Below, piece by piece: positions 6,514 to 45,094 of a stretch of DNA of 64,000 nucleotides. The notes beneath the pieces are model-generated. The model was given only the letters and a program-made list of their open reading frames with translations, made no database searches and was not told where the DNA came from. The DNA is from Octopus sinensis. Taxonomy: Eukaryota. The stretch is taken from the NCBI RefSeq assembly GCF_006345805.1, contig NC_042998.1, positions 48,546,001 to 48,610,000 on the forward strand, read 5' to 3'. How positions within the stretch are numbered: position 1 is the stretch's first letter; the number at the start of each line of letters is the position of its first letter. The translations under genes and the position numbers were made by a program.

Positions 6514-6906
6514 GGCGCAGGAGTGGCTGTGTGGTAAGTAGCTTGCTAACCAACCACATGGTTCCGGGTTCAGTCCCACTGCGTGGCATCTTGGGCAAGT
6601 GTCTTCTGCTATAGCCCCGGGCTGACCAATGCCTTGTGAGTGGATTTGGTAGACGGAAACTGAAAGAAGCCTGTCGTATATATGTATATATATATGTGTA
6701 TGTGTGTGTTTGTGTTTGTCCCCCAAGCATTGCTTGACAACCGATGCTGGTGTGTTTATGTCCCCGTAACTTAGCGGTTCGGCAAAAAGTGACCGATAGA
6801 ATAAGTACTGGGCTTACAAAAAGAATAAGTCCCGGGGTCGAGTTGCTCGATTAAAGGCGGTGCTCCAGCATGGCCGCAGTCAACTGACTGAAACAAGTAA
6901 AAAGAA
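6514..6906 (+). mobile_element. SINE family A, full length, young (reference copy)
   Basis: ggcgcaggagtggctgtgtggtaag (A box), ggttcagtccc (B box), cttgggcaagtgtc core, internal (TA)/(TG) tract, tail actgaaacaagtaaaaag. Confidence 0.92.
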
Positions 6907-11039: not shown

Positions 11040-11237
11040 GCACATTAGCTCACTCTCTCCATCAAATCGATATTGTCTGAACAGCTGCACTGTGTACCAC
11101 CCGTCAGGTGGGGAAGTGATCGAAGAGCAACGTCAGAGGAAGTGTATTGCTCAAGAACACAACGCTCCGTCTAGTCTAGGAATTGAAAGCACGATCGCTA
11201 GATCATGGGTGCAACACCTTAGCCACTAGGCCATGCG
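11040..11237 (-). mobile_element. SINE family C/D-like, decayed
   Basis: ttgctcaagaacacaac and agccactaggccatgcgcc match 23455-23548 and 26720-26740. Confidence 0.75.
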
Positions 11238-11259
11238 CCCTTATACACATACACACATA

Positions 11260-12984: not shown

Positions 12985-15166
12985 CTTCCGTCTGTTGTTA
13001 CCATTCCCCCCGATCTTCCCCTCTCTGCGGTGTGAACGCTCCGTCCTTGGTAGGGGTCTGCGTTTCCCCCTCACTCCATCCTGTAAGGAATCCAGACGCG
13101 AGTTGATGTCCACAGCTTTGTGCGCCGTGTCGGTTGGGTGCGCATTACCACGACTCGCCACCCACACCCCACGAAGAAGGAGGACGGCTGCTTCACTGGC
13201 CTCGGCCGCCGACCATCCCGTGGACGCCTGCCCTGGCCAGATCTAGCAGTGGATCTTTTCGCGGGCGCTTGCAGCGTGCATTGGAGCGGTTCAACTTCTC
13301 CAGGCGCCAACGCCGCCTCAAACATCTCCCCGGCTGAGCTCTTGGCTCTTCGTTCCCTCCAACGGCACGTGACATTATCATCAAACCGGCTGACAAGGGT
13401 GGAGCTGTAGTGGTGTGGCGCGCGGACCTCTATAGGGCCGAGGCTTTCCGCCAACTCAATGACACCTCCTTCTATTCCCCTCTGCCCTCTAACCCCACAC
13501 GTAGCTACACAGACGTATCCTCTACTGTCCAAGACCTCATCTCGTCCTCCCGTCTCCCCCGCACCGCATCCACCTAATTGTGCGAACCCCACGTACCCCC
13601 ACCATTTACTTCCTCCCCAAAATCCACAAACACCAACAACCCTGGCCGCCCCATCGTCTCCGCCTGTAACTGCCCCACGGAGCTCATCTCTAAATACCTC
13701 GACCGTGTCCTTGCCCCCTAGTGGCATCTCTCCCTCCCACATCCACGATCGATACCAACATGGCTCTCCGGCTTTCAACTCTTTCTCCTTTCCTCCCGGC
13801 TCCTCCAAAATCCTTTTACTATGGACATCCAAAGCTCTATACTGTTATCCCTCACCACGAAGGACTGCAGGCCCTTCGACACTTTCTTGACCTCCGCTCT
13901 AACCCTGTACCTGACACCTCCACACTCATTTGTCTGGCCGAATTTGTCCTACTCTGAACTGCTTCTCGTTCGCGGGCGAGAGTTCTACCATCAGATCTCG
14001 GGAGTGGCCATGGGAACGCGAATGGGCCCCAACTATGCGAACCTGTTCGTTGGCTATGTTGAGGCCCAAATATTCTCTAATTTCACTGGTCCCACTCCTG
14101 AACTATATGGTCGTTATATTGACGACATTATCGGTGCCACCCATCACTCTCCCGCGAACATCTAGATTCCTTCCTCTCTTTCGTTCCAATCTTTCCATCC
14201 AGGCCCTCCACTTCACTTCCACTATCTCCAACACCTCTGTCTCCTTCCTCGACATTTCGGTTAACATTCGTCACTCCACTCTTACCACCTCCATTCACTA
14301 CAAACACACAGACTCACACTCATACCTCAACTTCTCTTCCTCCACCCAGAACACACCAAGCTTTCCATCCCCTATTCCCAATTCCTCCGTTCTACGTAGG
14401 CTCTGTAGTGACGACCATGACTTTGAGACTCAGTCTCAACGTATGGCTCACCACTTCACCCTACGTGGATACCCCTCACCACTATCCACACCGCCCTTGC
14501 CAGAGCACGGTCCGTGGACCGTGTATCTGCTCTCTCTCCCCGAACCCGCCCTGTAGTCTCCCCCTTCTTTTCCCCTCACTTACAACCCCACGACCCTACG
14601 TCTCCAACGCACCATTCTTCGAGCTTTCCGTCATCTCCAGTCCGACCCGTCCACTTCACACCTCTTCCCTAACCGACCCCTCCCCCTCTTTCAAACGAGC
14701 CCACAACCTTCGAGACCTTTTGGTCCATAGCTCCTTCCCTGACCCTACCTCCCAACCCGGCTCGTTCCCTGCTCCCGCCCACGTTGCCGCACTTGCCCTT
14801 ACCTCTCCAACACCACCCGCCTCACTAGCACCCACCATCGACCTATCCATCATCCACTCCTTCACCTGCACCTCCAGCAATATTATATATGCATCTCTTG
14901 CTCTCTCTGCAATTCCTTGTAATCGGACAAACGGGACGCCGCTTGGCTGACCGGTTCGCGGAACACCTTCGTGACATCCACACTTGCGAACGACACATCG
15001 GTCTCACGCCATTTCCGCTCCACCGGTCACTCCTTGCAACACCTGTGTTCGGTTTGTCCTTACACAGAGGCCATCCGGATTCCCGTTTGCGCCGTGAACA
15101 GGAATTAATCTTCTCTCTTCGCTCTTATACGCCATTTGGTCTCAACTCTCCCCCCTCCTCATCTAA
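12985..15166 (+). pseudogene. PLE ORF: reverse transcriptase + GIY-YIG endonuclease, broken by many small frameshifts
   Basis: Track ORFs 12995, 13120, 13459, 13721, 13821, 13930, 14408 and 14889 tile one PLE polyprotein across frames; stop taa at 15164-15166. Confidence 0.92.
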
Positions 15167-15169
15167 CCT

Positions 15170-15460
15170 CACCCCCCCCTCCTCACCTATCCTTTCCCCC
15201 CGACCCTACTTCTTCCAGTCCTTCATCCTTCCAAACCTACTCCCTTCCATTTTCCCTCTTTCTCCCTCCCTCTTCCCCTTCCCTCTGCTCCCTCACTCCC
15301 TCTCTACCTTCTCTCTCCCCTCTCCCTCTTTCCTCCTTCATCCCCCTCCTCACTTCCTTCTCCCCCATCGTCTCTCTTTCCCCCTTCTCCTCCCCTCTTC
15401 TTCCCCTCCCCTTCCCCCCCTTCCCCCCCCCCTCTCCATCCCCCCTTCTCCTCACTACAC
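15170..15460. repeat. C/T-only polypyrimidine tract in the PLE 3' UTR
   Basis: almost no G on the plus strand. Confidence 0.9.
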
Positions 15461-15499
15461 CACATGACTTTACATATCACATCACATATGATGTGCAAT

Positions 15500-15835
15500 A
15501 ATACACACACCAACTAATACATACTAATACGTACTAATACATATAGTACATACTAATACTTACACCAACCCTATACATACACACGTCCAGACTCCGCATA
15601 CGCACTTTATACTCTCTCTCACACACCACACACACACCTATACATACCATACGTACTAATACATACTAATACATACTAATACATACACCAACCCCATACC
15701 ACGCACGTCCAGACCAATCTTACGCACTAATACTCTCTCCTACACACACCACACACACACACACACACCCTTATACATACTAATACATACACCAACCTAT
15801 ACATACACACATCCAGACCCTCCCACGCACTTTTA
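15500..15835 (+). repeat. higher-order tandem repeat (~120-130 bp units built on ATACTAATAC) in the PLE 3' UTR
   Basis: acaccaacc...cac(g/a)tccagac...cgcact recurs three times (about 15563, 15685, 15789), each preceded by ATACTAATAC copies. Confidence 0.8.
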
Positions 15836-21945: not shown

Positions 21946-23196
21946 TGTATGAAGCATCCCCTTCCTTTGAACAGCCATCCTTAAAAACTGAATGATTTTC
22001 AAATATAATTCTTTTTTTTTTTTTTTTTTATAGAATTTTCATATTTCCGTGTCATTACATTATGTTTAGTTTGAAACCGCTGCGCTCGTAAGCTCGTTGA
22101 TATTTCAAGACCTTCTGAGTAAAATTTACGCGTTACGCAGAAGGCAGAAAATGATCATGGGCATATTTGTCATAACCGATAAAATCGTTATCATCGGAAT
22201 TAAATTTAGTATACAATCGACCGCGTTAATTTTCATAGTGTATTCCATATGTAGTGCATCTGCGCGTTGAATTTTGTTACGTATTTCGATATTTATAAAT
22301 CTCCCGTTGTTAATATTCATGTTATTTTAGTGTTTTTTTTTCTGTTCGTTTTTTTTTTTTTTTTTTTTTTTTTACTAGAATTCTATATAAGATGTTAGTG
22401 CTATCAAGTAACGTTTTTCAATCAAGATTTGTTTCCTGCGCTGTATTGTAAATTATTGCAATGGCTTCATGCAAATGTATTGCCAACTGTCGAAAACTGT
22501 CATGTTTGTGTGTCCAGTGTAATTGTTTGTATCATGAAGTTTATAACTTACACGTTTGCTTTGAAATTTGCAAATTACGCTGGTTGTCCTAAGTAGGTTT
22601 TGTGGTTTGCAAGTTTATTGTTTCATGTTTATGAGACGTTATTTTTTTGTTCTAGCTGACTTTGTGTATATTCTACAAGTTTCTAGTTATGTTTGGTTTA
22701 CACGCACATACGAACGCGCGCACATACACACAAACACGAACACACACATTCACAAGCACCCATGCTTTGTTTTTTTACGACGCAATCATCCATTTTAAGA
22801 CTTAGGTACATTTCTTTCATGTTGTGTGCAGTATGTGTGGTCTCTGTTATTTCGCTGGTTGTTATATCTGCTGTATCTATGTTGGTCAATTTATCTTTTA
22901 TTGCTCTACAGATCGATCTACTAACTTTTTTTTTTCACTTTCGAAATTTCCTTATTTAAACCTTCTTTAGTCGATAAAATTTTTTAAAGCTTATAGTGGT
23001 TTTAGTACATGCCTTATATAAATATACACGACGTGGCTATGTGGTAAGAAGCTTGCATCGCAACCACATGGTTCCGGGTTCAGATCTACTGCATGGGACC
23101 TTGGATAAGTTTCTTCTACTTTAACTCCGGGCTGACAAAAGCCTTATGAGTGGATTTGGCTGACGGAAACTGAAAGAAGCTTGTCGTGTATATGTA

Positions 23197-23548
23197 AAAA
23201 AAGGGTAAAGGGTAAAGACCCCCTTCGGTCATGAGTGACCATGGGTTTTCACCTAGAGAGTTACCCTCTGAGGCACAAGTCTGGGCAAGGTTGTTTTATG
23301 GAAGACCAGTAGTCGCCCATGCATACCGGCCTCCCCTCTCCACGCCACCAGTGTTATCTAAGGAAAGACAAAGGTCGATACAGCTTGGCACCTGTGACGT
23401 CGCAACTCATTTCTACAGCTGAGTGAACTGGAGCAACGTGAAATAAAGTGCCTTGCTCAAGAACACAACACGCAGCCCGGTCCGGGATTCGAGCTCACAA
23501 CCTCACGATCGTAAGCTCGACGCTCTAACCACTGAGCCATGCGCCTCC
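23197..23548 (-). mobile_element. SINE family C, full length (left arm of the foldback dimer)
   Basis: tRNA-like head ggaggcgcatggctcagtggttagagc...tcgaatccc; (TTTACCC)2 tail facing left. Confidence 0.92.
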
Positions 23549-23551
23549 ACT

Positions 23552-23854
23552 TGAGGTTGTGAGCTCGAATCCCGGACCGGGCTGCGTGTTGTGTTCTTGA
23601 GCAAGGCACTTTATTTCACGTTGCACCAGTTCACTCAGCTGTAGAAATGAGTTGCGACGTCACTGGTGCCAAGCTGTATCGACCTTTGTCTTTCCCTTGG
23701 ATAACACTGGTGGCGTGGAGAGGGGAGGCTGGTATGCATGGGCGACTGCTGGTCTTCCATAAACAACCTTGCCCGGACTTGTGTCTAGGAGGGTAACTTT
23801 CTAGGTGCAATCCCATGGTCATTCATGACCGAAGGGGGTCTTTACCCTTTACCC
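23552..23854 (+). mobile_element. SINE family C lacking 43 nt of the 5' end (right arm of the foldback dimer)
   Basis: Reverse complement of 23203-23505 with 15 differences by manual alignment; (TTTACCC)2 tail facing right. Confidence 0.92.
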
Positions 23855-24099
23855 GTGTATATGTATATATATATATATACGTGTGTGTGTCTTTTTGTCG
23901 GTGTTTGTACCCCACCGATGGTTGACATCAAATGTTGGTGTGTTTACGTCCGCGTAACTTAGTGGTTCGGCAAAAGTTACCGATAAATAAGTACTGAGGT
24001 CGACTTTATTCGATTAAAAGATTCTCCATGGTGGTGCCCCAACATAGTCGCAGTATGATAACTGAAACAAGTAACGATAAAAAAATAAATGACATATAC

Positions 24100-24761: not shown

Positions 24762-25659
24762 TATTTGCTTCAGTCATGTGACTGCAGCCATTCTGGAGCA
24801 AAGCCATAAGGGATTTTAGTCGAACAAATCGACGCCAGAACTTATTCTTTGTAAGCCCAGTACTTATTCTATCGGCCTGTTTTGTCGAACCAATAAGTTA
24901 CGGGGACGTAAACACACCAACACCGGTTGTCGAGTGGTGATTAGTTAGTTAGTTCATTTTTTGGCTCAAAAAGCAAAAAGCAAGGCCATGTAGGGGGACA
25001 TGGAGTTATGTACAGGGTGGTTTCATGTAAAGAGTTCAGGCCACTTGAGGTCAATGGAGTCTTTGAACCGAGCGGTCGTCGGCATCTTCACCATCTCGTC
25101 TGGCAGCTTATTCCACGGATCCGCAAACCGGACGGAGAAAGCCCCTCTCCTTCGACTGAGATGAAATCGTCGCAGATAGAGCTTTTCGGAATGACCCCGC
25201 AGCCGATGCTCTGGAGCAGGAGTGAAGAACAGCTCTTTCGAGAGGTTACACTTTCCGCTTATGATGTTGTGAGCAAGAATGAGATCTCCACGGCGTCGTC
25301 GTTTTTCTAGAGAATAAAGGTCGAGTGTCTTCAGCCTTTCTTCATAAGACAAATTCTTGAGACCAAGAACCATGCGGGTAGCCAGCTTCTGGACTCTTTC
25401 GAGATGCTGTATGTCTTTGAGGAGATAAGGAGAAGAGGCTTGAATCCCGTACTCCAATATGGGTCTCACCAGCGTGACATAGAGCGGTAGGAATATGGCT
25501 GCTGTGAACATTCCGAATGACCGTCGAATCAAGAACAGAATTCCGCGTGCTTTGTTGGCAGCATGGACGCACTGGGCCGAAGGCGAAAAGGAGGAATCCA
25601 CCAAGATACCCAGGTCCTTTACCTGATCGGTCCTCTCCAGCAGGGACGGAAAAATACAG

Positions 25660-25690
<31 letters not shown>

Positions 25691-25852
25691 TATATAACGA
25701 GCTTCTTCCAGTTTCCGTCAACCAAATCTACTCGCTAAGATTTGGTCGGTTCCTAAGCTATAGTGGAAGGCGTTTGCCAAAGGTGTCACGCAGTGGGACT
25801 GAACCCAGAACCAAGTGGTTGAGAAGGAAGCTTCTTACCACACAGGCTCCGC
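24762..25852 (-). mobile_element. SINE family A interrupted by a CR1 fragment
   Basis: Tail half 24762-24940, head half 25655-25852. Confidence 0.85.
24941..25660 (-). mobile_element. CR1-clade LINE, 5'-truncated 3' end with an uninterrupted ORF2 C-terminus
   Basis: ORF 25023-25660: KDLGILVD, LVRPILEY, LERVQKLATRMV, SYEERL, RRRRGDLI, RGHS, FSVR, WNKLP; short 3' UTR and (CTAA)n tail at 24941-24955. Confidence 0.93.
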
Positions 25853-26428: not shown

Positions 26429-26742
26429 TATTTATTTATGCGTCCTTTTCAAGCCTATCCAGGCTCATGGGCCCGGTTTCCCGGTTTCTGTGGCGTATGT
26501 GTTCCCCCCAGCTGGACGGGATGCCAGTCCATCGCAGCGTTACTCAAGAAACAGGAAGAAAGAGTGAGAGAAAGTTGGGACGAAAGAGTATAACAGGGGT
26601 CACCACCACCCCCTGCCGGAGCCCCGTGGCGCTTTAGATGTTTTCGCTCAATAAACACACACAACGCCCGGTCTGGGAATCGAAACCACGATTCTCCGAC
26701 CGCGAGTCCGCTGCCCTAACCACTAGGCCATTGCACCTCCAC
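26429..26742 (-). mobile_element. SINE family D, full length, with 12-bp TSD
   Basis: tRNA-like head (ggaggtgcaatggcctagtggttaggg; ttcgattccc); gatggactggcatcccgtcc in the 3' part; TSD ctaagatcacat at 26417-26428 and 26743-26754. Confidence 0.92.
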
Positions 26743-28898: not shown

Positions 28899-29553
28899 TC
28901 CTTTCTACTAAAGGCACAAGGCCTGAAATTTTGAAGGAGATTACATCGACTCCAATGCGTAACTGGTATTTATTTCATCGACCCCGAAAGGATGCAAAGC
29001 AAAGTCGACCTCAATGGAATTTGAACTCAGAATATAAATACGTACGAAACGCTGCTAAGCATTTTGTCCGGCGTGTTAACGATTCAACCAGCTCATCGCC
29101 TTATTTATAATCATTAGTTTCAAATTTTGGCACAAGGCCAGCATTTTCAAGGGAGTGGGTAACTCGATTACATCGACCCCAATTTTCAACTAGTATTTAT
29201 TTTATCGACCTCAAAAGGATGAAAGGCAAAGTTGACCCCAGGGGAATTTGAACTCCGAACGCAAACGCGGACGAAATGCCGCTAAGCATGTTATCCGGCG
29301 TGCTAACGATTCTGCCAGCTCGTCACCTTATCTATAATCAATCCTACTCGAGGCACAAGGGCTGAAATTTTCGGAGAGGGGACTAGTCGATTACATCGAA
29401 CACAATATTTCACTGGTACTTAATTTATCGACTTCAAAACGATGAAAGGCAAGTCCACCTCAGCAGCATTTGAACTCAGAACGTAGCGACGGGCGAAATG
29501 TCGCAAAGCATTTCGTTCAGAGTACCAACGATTCTGCCAGCTCACTGCTTTCG
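28899..29553 (-). mobile_element. three consecutive SINE-B copies (28899-29102, 29114-29329, 29341-29557)
   Basis: Each has the core atcgacc..aaaggatg..aggcaaagt, ggaatttgaactc and its own head; tails are of two subtypes. Confidence 0.9.
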
Positions 29554-30877: not shown

Positions 30878-31216
30878 TTGGGTCATCCCATAAATAATGC
30901 GGGTTTTTTTTCAAATGCATGAACTAAAATAAATGTTGGTGGGGTTGGGATAAACCATCTGAATCAAATTGCTATACAATCAGGTACTCTCTCTTTACTC
31001 TTTTACTTGTTTCAGTCATTTGACTGCGGCCATGCTGGAACACCGCCTTTAATCGAGCAACTCGACCCTGGGACTTATTCTTTGTAAGCCCAGTACTTAT
31101 TCTATCGGTCTCTTTTGCCGAACCGCTAAGTAACGGGGACATAAACACACCAGCATCGGTTGTCAAGCAATGCTAGGGGGACAAATACAGACACACACAC
31201 ATACACGCACACACAC

Positions 31217-31294
<78 letters not shown>

Positions 31295-32289
31295 GACGGG
31301 CTTCTTTCAGTTTCCGTCTACCAAATCCACTCACAAGGCTTTGGTCGGCCCGAGGCTATAGTAGAAGACACATGCCCAAGGTGCCACGCAGTGGGACGGA
31401 ACCCGGAACCATGTGGTTGGTAAGCAAGCTACTTACCACACAGCCACTCCTGCGATAGTAATTTTACTTTGTCCTTATTCTTAGTTTTGAAGAGTGCAGT
31501 TCGATTTTAGCAGTTATTTTTTTCAAAGTTATAATGAAAGTGACAAAGAAGCGTATTTGGCATAATTTGTTTTATGAGGCAACAACTCAACGGCATAATT
31601 TGCTTTATGAGACAACTCAACGGAAAGTGTGTGGAATATTAATGAGGAATATGGGAATCGGACAATAAGCGTAAGCCAGTGTCAACGATGCGTCCAGAAA
31701 TTCCGAATCGGAAACTACAGCCTAGAAGACGAGCCCCGTCCTGGAAGATCTGTAGAGCTTGACGAGGACGTCCTTCAAACACTGGTGGAGCAAAATCCCA
31801 TCGTAATAGTTGAGAAATGAACAGAACAGCTTAGATTTGGTCATTCAACAATTCATCGACACTTGCACTAGCAGAAAAACGACCACCTTCAGTTTCAAGA
31901 CGAAAGGTATTCTTCCATCAGGATAATGCTCGGCCACATACAGCGAGGATGATATTCCAAAGGCTGGAGCAGTTTGAGTGGGAAACGACGCTTCACCCAC
32001 CATATTCACCGGACATTTCCCCATCTGATTATCATTCATTTCGCAGTCTTCAAAATCGTTTGAACGAAAAAAAAATGAATTCTGTTGACTAGGTCAGAAC
32101 AGTACTGGAGGAATATTTTTCGTCACGGATAATTGAATTTTGGAAGAGAGACCTTGCAAGTTTCCCGATAGATGAAAGAGCATTGTAGAAAATGAAGGAG
32201 AGTATATTTTAGATTAAAAATGAACTACGTTCATCTTAATTTTCAAAAATGAAAGTATAAAAAACCGCATTATTTATGGGATGACCCAA
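30878..32289 (+). mobile_element. mariner (Hsmar1/Mos1-like TIR), internally deleted, with a SINE-A insertion
   Basis: TIR ttgggtcatcccataaataatgcgg at 30878 and its inverse ending 32289; transposase remnants SLEDEPRPGRSVELD, HQDNARPH, HPPYSPDISPSDY, W/KSIVENEGEYILD. Confidence 0.92.
30985..31454 (-). mobile_element. SINE family A, young, full length, inside the mariner
   Basis: Near-identical to 6514-6906; long internal (TA)n at 31215-31293. Confidence 0.93.
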
Positions 32290-32329: not shown

Positions 32330-33576
32330 CATCGCATCCGTCATCTATTACCGCTTGACTGTCGTCCCTTGCCTTGTTTGCTGGTTGACCAACCTGGTAC
32401 GCTCACTTTTCCACTTTCTGTAGAAGGGGTGCGTTCCACTGGTCAGGCGCTCCATCTGCTGTCAACAGCCGCTGAATGGAGGGCTGGATATGCCGTGGTT
32501 GCTGATGCGCAGACATGCGCTGAGGTTGCGGCATCTCCAGCGTTTCCTTGAACGGTGAGCAGGTGTGGTCACCGTTTGTAAGACACGCCTTTCCACAGCT
32601 CGTCTCTTTGACTGAGTTGCAATCTTGGATTAGGCGTAGACCGAGGAGGGGCGCTTGGTACCTCGAGTGCCGTCAAGTGCTCACAGCCCTCCGCCAGGCG
32701 GGCAATGCAGTCGCTGGTAGTTCTACTCTAGCGTTATATAGAGGGCTAGTGGAGGAAAAGTGCGACGACTTCCTTGGAGAAACTCTGGGCGTCGATGAAG
32801 ATCAACTAACCGGTCAGTTTCAGAGAACTTTCGGGCCTGGGCCTATGGACAACTTCCAAAAATCCCTTGCTTGGCAGTGCTACCGAAGGGCGCTGTCTGT
32901 TGATGATAAACTTTCCAGGCACGGAAGTGCCGTCAGACGGTGCGCCCAGAACGATGAAACCGTTCTGCACGCCCTAGTCCAGTGCCCGAGTATTGCTGAC
33001 CTGTGGGTTTAGGTCGAGCACCTGCTGTCACGTATAGGACGAATTCGGCTATCATCTGAATCCACTGTGAAGATTTCCCCGCCGCCCTCTTTTGGCCAGG
33101 AAGGGAAGGCAGTTTTTATGTCTAGTGGCTGTAGCGAAAGAGATAGTATGGTGGACCCATTTGAAAAGGCTAAAGACAGACACTTTCCTCTTTGGTCAAG
33201 CCCTCATCACCTTTTTCAAGTTTCACTTGAATAGGAAGTTGGGGATAGAGAGGGAAGTATTGTCTTGTAACAAGTCTGTTGAAAGGTGGGTAAATGTTGG
33301 AAGAATGGCCAGTGTGAAAGGATCAATTCTGAGCGCGCACCTGTAAACAAAAGAAGGGCTCTTGCCCTGTTGCTCAGGCACCCGTGACTTTTGTGGGTTT
33401 TTCACGAGGTCCTTAATGCGCCTCCTCTATTGGGAGTTTTAAAATTGCTTAATTTTTAATCGTTATATATACTGTTTACACGTTGTAAAATCCATTGTAT
33501 CGTCCCATTTTTGACTTTTATGTTGTTGCATGTCTCTTAATGTAATTTTTTGTAAGCCCTTGTGGCCAATAAACGA

Positions 33577-44399: not shown

Positions 44400-44455
<56 letters not shown>

Positions 44456-44461
<6 letters not shown>

Positions 44462-44685
44462 AAAAAACACTTTTATCAATTCAAAGTGAACAATTAAATT
44501 ACACCATCTAGAAAATTACATATAATGGAAATATTAAAATTAAAATGACAATAATATACCGATGATTAAGTAAATGCAAAATAATAATAAAAACGTATAT
44601 ATTAATATAAATATATATATATTATATAGGGAGAATTCACAAAAAAAACAAAAGGCGAATACAGGTCGTGTAGACAACAAGAGAT

Positions 44686-44721
<36 letters not shown>

Positions 44722-44729
44722 GTGCATAT

Positions 44730-44760
<31 letters not shown>

Positions 44761-45043
44761 ATATATATATATATATAAAAGAAAAAAACACTTTTATCAA
44801 TTCAAAGTGAACAATTAAATTACACATCTAGAAAATTACATATAATGGAAATGTTAAAATTAAAATGACAATAATATACCGATGATTAAGTAAATTGCAA
44901 AATAATAATAAAAACGTATATATTAATATAAATATATATATATATATAGGGAGAATTCACAAAAAAAACAAAAGGCGAATACAGGTCGTGTAGACAACAA
45001 GAGATGTACACACACACACACACACACACACCCACATACGTGC

Positions 45044-45045
<2 letters not shown>
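44456..45045 (+). repeat. near-identical tandem duplication, period ~321 bp, bounded by (TA)n
   Basis: Copy 1 44456-44727, copy 2 44777-45045; each carries a truncated minus-strand PLE end (tatagggagaattcacaaaaaaaacaaaaggcgaatacagg). Confidence 0.92.
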
Positions 45046-45075
<30 letters not shown>

Positions 45076-45094
45076 ATATAATATATATATATAT

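What the first reader, a model, noticed from the sequence alone, without database searches (positions are those of the whole stretch)
23185..23865. Head-to-head SINE dimer forming a ~300-bp foldback inside ONE target-site duplication (best candidate for a new mechanism)
Seen: a full-length minus copy (23197-23548) and a plus copy missing 43 nt of its head (23552-23854) meet head to head, with both (TTTACCC)n 3' tails facing outward. The whole 657-bp unit is bracketed by one TSD, (c)gtgtatatgta (23185-23196, 23854-23865), which restores the host SINE-A. The arms differ at 15 of ~303 positions; 13 differences are distal and the 73 nt next to the 46-nt spacer are identical. Established: classical twin priming inverts only the 5' part of one RNA and gives one tail. 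Inference: both staggered nicks primed reverse transcription from an RNA 3' end (double-ended TPRT), and the two cDNAs were joined at their 5' ends. The identity gradient suggests later arm-to-arm conversion or two different source RNAs. The product would be a long, strong dsRNA/cruciform.
Basis: partly seen in the sequence, partly recalled or inferred. Interest (0 to 1): 0.8.

Follow-up and report, generated by a model that had tools for sequence, protein, structure and literature searches.

The report
Inverted SINE pair from one insertion
Two copies of an octopus short retroposon sit head to head inside a single target-site duplication, so one integration event made both; this is a rare by-product of a known insertion mechanism, not a new one.

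Summary
A full-length minus copy (23197-23548) and a plus copy lacking its first 43 nt (23552-23854) meet head to head with both tails outward. An exact 12-nt duplication brackets the pair, and neither arm has flanking repeats of its own. Removing the pair and one repeat restores the host SINE, which carries that 12-mer once in other copies.

The element has a tRNA-Arg-like head, a CORE domain and a (TTTACCC)2 tail. It probably belongs to the octopus OR1/OR2 families.

One integration event made both arms (about 0.85). I could not resolve how. Priming of reverse transcription from both staggered 3' ends on two RNAs is slightly favoured (0.45). Snap-back self-copying of one full-length cDNA is close behind (0.33). 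No other copy of this SINE could be retrieved, so the 15 arm differences cannot be polarised.

Penelope-like elements routinely give this architecture, and one such protein extends both strands in vitro. R2 reverse transcription gives snap-back junctions in cells.

One oddity remains unexplained. All 8 transitions between the arms are G.T wobbles on the + strand (chance 0.008).

The parts
23033..23196 (+). Host SINE-A copy, 5' part up to the insertion point
   Evidence: 86% identical to the SINE-A consensus, positions 14-177. Colinear with other copies.
23185..23196 (.). Left target-site duplication, CGTGTATATGTA
   Evidence: Exact 12-nt direct repeat D6. The six other SINE-A copies that span the site carry it once. 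Lies exactly at the boundary.
23197..23548 (-). Full-length SINE-C copy (minus arm). Possibly extends to 23551 if AGT is its templated 5' end.
   Evidence: The head starts GGAGGCGCATGGCTCAGTGG. A related SINE also has GT before GGAGG.
23197..23202 (-). T6 run (A6 on the + strand) at the 3' end of the minus arm only. It looks like a pol III terminator or RNA 3' U-run. The host consensus lacks it.
23203..23216 (-). (TTTACCC)x2 tail of the minus arm
   Evidence: There are only two matches in the window, and both are in the dimer.
23529..23539 (-). Pol III A box TGGCTCAGTGG (SINE positions 10-20). Present only in the minus arm.
   Evidence: Read directly from the sequence. ARAGORN and Rfam do not call a tRNA.
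23485..23495 (-). B-box-like AGCTCGAATCC (SINE positions 54-64), minus arm. The plus-arm copy is at 23562-23572.
   Evidence: Read directly from the sequence.
23405..23471 (-). CORE-type central domain (SINE positions 78-144), minus arm. The plus-arm copy is at 23586-23652.
   Evidence: 77-81% matches over positions 56/78-144, and exact 25-29-nt matches, in SINE-like contigs from metagenomes.
23506..23551 (.). 46 nt between the paired arms: head nt 1-43 of the minus copy plus ACT
   Evidence: Inverted repeat I1. Loop of the predicted hairpin.
23549..23551 (.). Junction trinucleotide ACT. Either filler or the templated SINE 5' end. There is no microhomology to the snap-back or join site.
   Evidence: Base-by-base reading of 23500-23552.
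23552..23854 (+). 5'-truncated SINE-C copy (plus arm), from SINE position 44 to the tail. It has no A box and no T6.
23841..23854 (+). (TTTACCC)x2 tail of the plus arm
23854..23865 (.). Right target-site duplication, (C)GTGTATATGTA
23866..24080 (+). Host SINE-A copy, internal (TA)n/(TG)n microsatellite and 3' part

Best explanation
A single target-primed reverse-transcription event inserted both arms at one pair of nicks staggered by 12 bp, in the (TA)n/(TG)n microsatellite of an older SINE-A. I hold this umbrella claim at about 0.85.

Favoured sub-mechanism (0.45), in steps:
1. The + strand 3'-OH (...ATGTA) primed on the U-run end of one SINE-C RNA and made a full-length cDNA. This became the minus arm.
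2. The opposite 3'-OH (...CACG) would normally start second-strand synthesis. Instead it primed in the (UUUACCC) tail of a second SINE-C RNA and made a cDNA that stopped at position 44. This became the plus arm.
3. The two cDNA 3' ends were joined with 0-3 nt of filler, either by end joining or by a template jump onto the end of the full-length cDNA.
4. Fill-in of the stagger gave the single TSD.

Shown: the anatomy, the single TSD and the restored empty site. Inferred: the order of events, the use of two RNAs and the enzyme. The partner is probably a LINE with a repeat tail, but it was not identified.

The product has no evident function. Only the minus arm keeps the A and B boxes and a terminator. 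Read-through transcription of either strand would give a roughly 300-bp hairpin RNA.
For: - Single TSD with no second TSD around either arm.
- The empty site reconstructs the host SINE-A.
- Both arms end in the tail repeats directly against the TSD. Each has 1-nt primer-tail microhomology: A against U on the left, G against C on the right. The start points differ, with T6 on the left only. This is what two independent primings predict. A snap-back copy would have to stop 6 nt short of its template.
- There is no base pairing between the cDNA 3' end (...CCACT) and the site where the plus arm starts. The terminal T faces C23506. This disfavours self-priming.
- Differences are depleted in the tRNA-head and CORE part, with 1 of 15 in the first 101 nt (p = 0.019). 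This is where source genes of one family would be expected to differ least.
- An inverted repeat born about 5% diverged is more likely to survive than a perfect 303-bp repeat with a 46-nt spacer. This rests on established knowledge about inverted Alu pairs, not on a test here.
- Precedent: a PLE protein cleaves and extends both strands in vitro (PMC11167929). L1 twin priming uses the second 3' end as a primer (PMC12016303).
Against: - No second copy of the family could be retrieved, so it is untested whether arm-specific bases are subfamily variants.
- All 8 transitions are G.T wobbles on the + strand (p = 0.008; no regional bias). Two independent RNAs do not predict this.
- Priming of a second RNA's 3' tail by the second nick has not been documented for LINE-mobilised SINEs in the papers I could search. 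Alu 5' inversions occur at about 0.02% (PMC12016303).
- Snap-back after full-length cDNA is experimentally documented (PMC11371274) and also gives one full-length arm plus one arm lacking the head.
Confidence: 0.45

Rival explanations
1. One-RNA cDNA snap-back. The + strand nick primed a full-length cDNA. Its 3' end then folded back and copied the cDNA itself from position 44 out to the tail. This hairpin strand was joined to the other staggered end by 1-nt microhomology, and second-strand synthesis fixed it. The arms were identical at birth, and all 15 differences arose later.
For: - The anatomy fits: a full-length arm, an inverted arm lacking exactly the head (which forms the loop), and one TSD.
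- The mechanism is documented. R2 TPRT in human cells gives snap-back 5' junctions, for one protein especially after full-length cDNA (PMC11371274). Hairpin-primed inverted duplications occur at L1-induced ends (10.1101/2024.12.14.628481).
- It puts both arms on one strand. This is the only simple way for a strand-specific process to make all 8 transitions G.T wobbles on the + strand. Fraying from the open end could also give the distal excess of differences.
Against: - There is no complementarity at the fold-back point, and the terminal T is mismatched.
- The copy must stop 6 nt before the end of its template. It must also avoid copying the TSD overhang, which would give an inverted TSD or a hairpin-capped end.
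- With 5 transversions and a local ts:tv of 1.8, about 4.5 ordinary transitions of the opposite polarity are expected even under this model (P(0) about 0.01-0.02). The polarity therefore supports it only weakly; I estimate a likelihood ratio of about 4.
- A perfect 303-bp inverted repeat would be unstable.
Confidence: 0.33
2. Two sequential independent insertions at the same hotspot, followed by deletion of the internal TSD and 43 nt of one head.
For: The SINE-A internal microsatellite is a repeated target. Another SINE-A copy (L001 5190-5915) has a different insertion of about 330 bp at the same point.
Against: - No trace of a second TSD.
- It needs a precise deletion that removes one TSD copy and leaves the full-length head intact to its last base.
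- Three TSD copies are expected, and two are seen.
Confidence: 0.05
3. Ordinary single TPRT of a pre-formed hairpin RNA (antisense copy joined to a sense copy, for example a copy-back product) that had been A-to-I edited.
For: - All 8 transitions can be read as A-to-G on the + sense strand.
- Neighbouring bases are mildly ADAR-like: G at -1 for 1 of 8 sites and G at +1 for 4 of 8.
- The left end starts exactly with the complement of the terminal U-run.
Against: - No known source for such an RNA.
- A reverse transcriptase would have to copy through a 300-bp RNA duplex.
- The transversions and indels are left unexplained.
- The support is purely post hoc.
Confidence: 0.04
4. Later DNA-level inverted duplication of a single SINE insertion, by replication template switching.
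For: Template switching at forks does generate inverted duplications (PMC10766183).
Against: The duplicated segment would have to end by chance within 6 nt of the element's tail and land exactly between the head and the right TSD. There is no flanking host DNA in the duplication.
Confidence: 0.04
5. A SINE-derived foldback element or MITE moved as DNA by a transposase that makes long TSDs.
For: Arms of about 300 bp acting as terminal inverted repeats, and an 11-12-bp TSD.
Against: - The termini are not symmetric. A6 lies between the left TSD and the inverted repeat only.
- There are no other copies in 84 kb of octopus DNA.
- The arms are ordinary retroposon copies with their tails outward.
Confidence: 0.03
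6. Assembly or read artefact (fold-back chimera).
For: Palindromes are a known artefact class in long-read data.
Against: - The arms differ at 15 positions.
- One arm is truncated.
- The palindrome stops exactly at the element ends.
- A direct TSD and colinear host sequence flank it.
Confidence: 0.03

Closest known systems
Penelope-like element insertions: a full-length copy with an inverted 5'-truncated copy at its 5' end
   Same: The architecture is the same, including one TSD around the whole unit (9-10 bp in Adineta vaga examples, PMC3846280; general description in PMC8557442). The target is AT-rich or a microsatellite. One PLE protein cleaves and extends both strands in vitro (PMC11167929).
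   Different: The element here is a tRNA-derived CORE-SINE with a heptamer-repeat tail. It has no pLTR, no hammerhead motif, and no similarity to the RT-bearing remnant in the window that I tentatively read as a PLE. Its mobiliser is unknown and is more likely a LINE.
L1 twin priming (5' inversion)
   Same: The second staggered 3' end is used as a primer. There is one TSD and two opposite-oriented segments joined internally.
   Different: Twin priming starts inside the same RNA. It gives one tail and essentially non-overlapping segments (median overlap 12 bp, PMC12016303). Here both arms carry the tail and share 303 nt.
cDNA snap-back 5' junctions in R2-mediated insertion (PRINT)
   Same: A full-length cDNA is followed by DNA complementary to itself before the 5' junction forms (PMC11371274).
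   Different: That work used an engineered R2 system in human cells. Here the copy would run the whole length of the cDNA, there is no microhomology at the fold-back point, and the arms are now 5% diverged.
Hairpin-primed inverted duplications and foldbacks at L1-induced breaks
   Same: A self-annealed 3' end primes inverted synthesis at a TPRT end (10.1101/2024.12.14.628481).
   Different: Those events duplicate genomic DNA or fold back whole chromosome arms. They are not a contained retroposon dimer within a TSD.
Closely spaced inverted Alu pairs
   Same: Long intramolecular dsRNA when transcribed. They are a classic ADAR substrate and a fragile inverted repeat.
   Different: Alu pairs arise from independent insertions, each with its own TSD.

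Membership tests
tRNA-derived CORE-SINE (octopus OR1/OR2 type) | Internal pol III A and B boxes in a tRNA-like head | tested here: met
   A box TGGCTCAGTGG at positions 10-20. B-like box AGCTCGAATCC at 54-64. Anticodon-loop-like TTACGAT, which reads as Arg-ACG.
tRNA-derived CORE-SINE (octopus OR1/OR2 type) | Head recognisable as a tRNA by a tRNA finder | tested here: not met
   ARAGORN finds 0 tRNAs in the window. There is no tRNA match in the Rfam E-value scan. This is usual for degenerate SINE heads.
tRNA-derived CORE-SINE (octopus OR1/OR2 type) | CORE central domain | tested here: met
   Positions 78-144 match CORE-like SINE sequences in many unrelated contigs. That it resembles the MIR/CORE consensus is from my memory. 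Octopus OR1/OR2 are listed as CORE-SINEs (PMC4758252, PMC4824008).
tRNA-derived CORE-SINE (octopus OR1/OR2 type) | Short tandem-repeat tail and TSD | tested here: met
   (TTTACCC)x2 on each arm and a 12-nt TSD. The 3' stem-loop is not significant (z about -1).
tRNA-derived CORE-SINE (octopus OR1/OR2 type) | Dispersed multicopy family, and identity to the published OR1/OR2 sequence | not testable with these tools
   No other copy in the window or L001. No cephalopod DNA collection was available, and the published sequences are not held.
L1-type twin priming | Single TSD around two opposite-oriented segments | tested here: met
L1-type twin priming | Inverted segment primed internally on the same RNA, giving one tail and little shared sequence | tested here: not met
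   Two tails, and 303 nt shared by both arms.
Penelope-like element insertion | Inverted 5'-truncated copy abutting the 5' end of a full copy inside one TSD | tested here: met
   Compared with PMC8557442 and PMC3846280.
Penelope-like element insertion | PLE-derived sequence (pLTR, hammerhead ribozyme, or a PLE 3' end) | tested here: not met
   No hammerhead among the Rfam matches. No similarity to the RT-bearing remnant at 13.0-15.5 kb or to anything else in the window.
Penelope-like element insertion | Mobilisation by a GIY-YIG RT protein | not testable with these tools
   The partner element was not identified.
cDNA snap-back product | Second arm is the reverse complement of the first, starting at an internal point, with the first arm ending at the template's 5' end | tested here: met
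cDNA snap-back product | Arms identical at birth | tested here: inconclusive
   The arms are 95% identical now. The differences cannot be polarised without a family consensus.
cDNA snap-back product | Base pairing of the 3' end at the fold-back point | tested here: not met
   Zero nt of pairing. The terminal T23551 faces C23506.
Foldback DNA transposon / MITE | Symmetric termini abutting the TSD | tested here: not met
   An extra A6 on the left side only.

The most novel reading that the evidence does not exclude
Both arms once lay on a single-stranded hairpin intermediate, either a snap-back cDNA or a copy-back RNA. Before second-strand synthesis that strand was deaminated, either C-to-U by an AID/APOBEC-like activity or spontaneously, or A-to-I by ADAR. 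The 8-of-8 strand polarity of the transitions would then be a genomic fossil of editing of a retrotransposition intermediate in a cephalopod.
Probability: 0.12. Interest if true: 0.7.

Novelty: new variant of a known kind. Interest (0 to 1): 0.4.

Why it matters
If a census shows that such dimers recur, they would record how often the second nick of a LINE-type integration is captured for reverse transcription, or how often cDNAs snap back, in a natural genome. Most current evidence on this comes from engineered systems or cancer genomes. The census would also show whether the Penelope-style inverted architecture is a general property of target-primed reverse transcription rather than a peculiarity of GIY-YIG elements.

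Locally, the insertion creates a roughly 300-bp perfect-stem hairpin. In an animal with very active ADAR editing this is a candidate dsRNA or editing substrate, and also a fragile inverted repeat. As a single locus with no family context, it is a curiosity and not a discovery.

Tried and rejected
Attempts to obtain other SINE-C copies, needed to polarise the 15 differences. All failed:
- BLAST and nhmmer against the window and a 20-kb Octopus vulgaris locus.
- Exact-pattern scan of metagenome contigs. It found only CORE-domain relatives from other organisms.
- Exact-pattern scan of prokaryote genomes. It gave two matches in bacterial MAGs, too short to mean anything.
- Exact-pattern scan of viral contigs. 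No match.
- Protein-space searches with the 63-aa arm ORF and with a six-frame concatenation.
- Exact look-ups of arm ORFs and of the neighbouring LINE ORF.
- A k-mer search of the literature, and one wasted literature search on tail motifs.

Other checks:
- The LINE-ORF protein search identified the genus (90% to an Octopus vulgaris protein). The locus it led to, L001, is not orthologous.
- CpG decay was tried as a clock or discriminator. It is useless here, because CpG sites are not hypermutable in local SINE-A copies (ratio 1.02).
- Regional strand bias was tested as an explanation for the transition polarity and rejected.
- Selection for a + strand RNA hairpin was rejected, because 5 transversions and 2 indels break pairs with no compensation.
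- RT misincorporation during snap-back was rejected, because 5% is far above any reverse transcriptase error rate.
- The Rfam MIR860 hit over the junction is a generic long-hairpin artefact below the gathering score.
- No other inverted SINE dimer exists in the window or L001.
Full report
**What is there.** The window is octopus DNA. A LINE ORF 1.2 kb away is 90% identical to an Octopus vulgaris protein, and its DNA is 93.7% identical to a copy on O. vulgaris chromosome OX597823.1.

At 23197-23548 lies a 352-nt retroposon on the minus strand. At 23552-23854 lies a 303-nt copy on the plus strand that starts at position 44 of the first. The two are 95.07% identical. They form an inverted repeat with 46 nt between the arms, made of the first 43 nt of the full copy plus ACT.

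Both arms end outward in GGGGGTC(TTTACCC)2. The minus arm carries an extra T6. An exact 12-nt CGTGTATATGTA abuts both outer ends.

Either strand would fold into an almost perfect 300-bp hairpin. The + strand RNA folds at -621.4 kcal/mol (z = -60) and the - strand RNA at -598.2 kcal/mol.

**Is the duplication real?** Yes, on four grounds.
- Joining 23020-23196 to 23866-24095 gives a sequence that aligns colinearly with seven other copies of the host SINE-A. Six of them span the site, and each has CGT[A/G]TATATGTA once, at the start of an internal (TA)n/(TG)n microsatellite.
- In this microsatellite-rich window a shared 12-mer occurs in only about 0.6% of random flank pairs.
- Each arm alone shares only 3-4 nt between its flanks, which is the chance level. 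There is no hidden second TSD.
- The A6 next to the left repeat is not host sequence.

An assembly fold-back artefact is excluded for four reasons. The arms differ at 15 positions, one arm is truncated, the palindrome stops exactly at the element ends, and a direct repeat plus colinear host DNA flank it.

**What the element is.**
- The head has a canonical A box (TGGCTCAGTGG, positions 10-20), a B-like box (positions 54-64) and an Arg-ACG-like anticodon loop. It is too degenerate for ARAGORN or Rfam.
- Positions 78-144 are a CORE-type central domain. A 17-mer from it hit 116 metagenome contigs, and 31 of them aligned to the SINE over parts of positions 56-144 with sequences of the MIR/CORE type.
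- The literature lists octopus OR1/OR2 (tRNA-Arg-derived, Ohshima and Okada 1994) as CORE-SINEs (PMC4758252, PMC4824008). SINE-C is probably one of them, but I could not compare sequences.
- The heptamer-repeat tail suggests a LINE partner with a repeat tail. A neighbouring LINE ends in (AACT)n.
- Nothing in the window shares the SINE-C 3' half. The 3' stem-loop is not significant.

**One event or two?**
- Sequential insertions at this hotspot would leave three TSD copies, or would need an exact deletion.
- A later DNA-level inverted duplication would have to end by chance at the tail.
- A foldback DNA transposon would have symmetric termini, yet A6 is present on one side only.
- A retrocopied dimer RNA has no plausible source.

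I therefore hold at about 0.85 that one integration at one pair of nicks staggered by 12 bp made both arms.

**Which sub-mechanism?** Two candidates fit the anatomy.

Double priming:
- The + strand 3'-OH (...ATGTA) primed on the U-run of one RNA and ran full length.
- The - strand 3'-OH (...CACG) primed in the tail of a second RNA and stopped at position 44.
- The two cDNA 3' ends were then joined.

Snap-back:
- One full-length cDNA folded back and copied itself out to the tail.

Evidence favouring double priming:
- Each tail abuts the TSD with 1-nt primer-tail microhomology, and the two start points differ, with T6 on one side only. A snap-back copy would have to stop 6 nt short of its template and not copy the TSD overhang.
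- The cDNA 3' end (...CCACT) has no pairing with the fold-back point, and the terminal T faces a C.
- Differences are depleted in the head and CORE part, with 1 of 15 in the first 101 nt (p = 0.019).
- An inverted repeat born imperfect is more likely to persist.

Evidence favouring snap-back:
- It is experimentally documented after full-length cDNA synthesis by R2 proteins (PMC11371274). Hairpin-primed inverted duplications are seen at L1-induced ends (10.1101/2024.12.14.628481).
- Priming of a second RNA's tail by the second nick is documented only for a Penelope-like protein in vitro (PMC11167929).
- The transition polarity described next fits it better.

My estimate is 0.45 for double priming against 0.33 for snap-back. 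This is a near tie.

**An unexplained regularity.** The 15 differences are 8 transitions, 5 transversions and 2 homopolymer indels. All 8 transitions are G.T wobbles in the + strand hairpin and A.C mismatches in the - strand hairpin. Every one can therefore be written as a deamination (C-to-U or A-to-I) on the + strand.
- The two-sided chance of this is 0.008.
- A control on 27 SINE-A fragments in both orientations shows no regional strand bias, with 174 against 185 transitions of the two polarities.
- The window as a whole has C>G on the + strand.

The pattern would fit a strand-specific process acting while both arms lay on one strand. However, given 5 transversions and a local ts:tv of 1.8, about 4.5 ordinary transitions of the other polarity are expected under any model (P(0) about 0.01-0.02). 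No model explains it well. I found the pattern post hoc and treat it as suggestive only.

CpG decay cannot help, because CpG sites are not hypermutable here (ratio 1.02). Only one difference could be polarised. At position 117 the CORE relatives have T or C, so the plus arm's A is derived.

**What could not be done.** The decisive test is to polarise the differences against a family consensus and to census such dimers. That needs cephalopod genome sequence, and none of the collections holds it. The route through protein look-ups yielded a single unrelated 20-kb locus. All attempts are listed under 'tried and rejected'.

**Comparison with what is known.**
- Classical twin priming is not met, because there are two tails and 303 nt of overlap.
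- The architecture is exactly that of Penelope-like element insertions: an inverted 5'-truncated copy at the 5' end of a full copy, one TSD, and an AT-rich or microsatellite target (PMC8557442, PMC3846280). The element itself has no PLE features.
- Snap-back junctions are a known TPRT side-product.

This is a new variant: a tRNA-derived CORE-SINE showing an outcome known from other retroelement systems. In the papers I could search, I found no report of a LINE-type SINE inverted dimer with two tails in one TSD.

**Function.** None is evident. Only the minus arm keeps the A and B boxes and a T6 terminator, so pol III would transcribe one arm only. The hairpin RNA would arise only from read-through transcription. 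In octopus it would be a natural ADAR or siRNA substrate, but that is speculation.

**Verdict.**
- Novelty: a new variant of a known kind.
- Interest: 0.4.

Noticed in passing
window 23235-23822 (8 base pairs listed in the notebook, entry 4): All 8 transition differences between the arms are G.T wobbles on the + strand and A.C on the - strand. The chance of this is 0.008, local SINE-A copies show no strand bias, and no model explains it well.
   Followed up: partly
L001 5190-5915 (minus) compared with window 23185-23196: Another SINE-A copy, in O. vulgaris chromosome OX597823.1, has an unrelated insertion of about 330 bp at the same point. It follows CGTCGTATATATGTAT and a (CAT)n run. The internal microsatellite of SINE-A therefore looks like a recurrent insertion hotspot.
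   Followed up: partly
loci L003, L005, L013, L016, L039-L044, L082-L095 and others (metagenome contigs): A 25-29-nt stretch of the SINE-C CORE domain (GTTCTTGAGCAAGGCACTTTA...) is exactly conserved in SINE-like sequences on many contigs labelled as metagenomic. Presumably this is eukaryotic host DNA in those samples.
   Followed up: partly
window 13000-15500 (+): Frameshifted retroelement remnant with an RT motif (YIDDIIGA; Pfam RVT_1 only at E = 0.03) followed by a GIY-YIG-like GQTGRRLADRFAEH. It looks like a Penelope-like element. That assignment is from motif recall and was not confirmed.
   Followed up: partly
window 24941-25721 (-): 3' end of a LINE whose ORF is 90% identical to an O. 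vulgaris protein (P0001). It ends in an (AACT)n microsatellite tail. It is not the partner of SINE-C.
   Followed up: partly
window, 27 SINE-A fragments (for example 2222-2636, 6514-6902, 30999-31454): CpG sites in SINE-A copies mutate no faster than other sites (0.124 against 0.121 per site). This suggests these repeats are not methylated in the germline.
   Followed up: yes
window 11104-11242 (-) and 26615-26740 (-): Two other SINE-like elements share the tRNA-like head (and one of them part of the CORE) with SINE-C but have different 3' parts. They may be module-swapped relatives.
   Followed up: no
window 28939-29544 and 44403-45094: Tandem repeats with long units: 227 bp x 2.7 copies at 77% identity, and 320 bp x 2.2 copies at 97% identity. 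The second is flanked by (TA)n.
   Followed up: no
protein P0001: The source name of the octopus LINE protein is 'PKU43604.1 hypothetical protein llap_6084 [Octopus vulgaris]'. As far as I recall, that locus-tag style belongs to a bird genome project. This may be a contamination or relabelling issue in the public record.
   Followed up: no
window 32548-33012 (+): ORF with a zf-RVT domain (E = 6e-5, below the Pfam cut-off). This is another non-LTR retrotransposon remnant.
   Followed up: no
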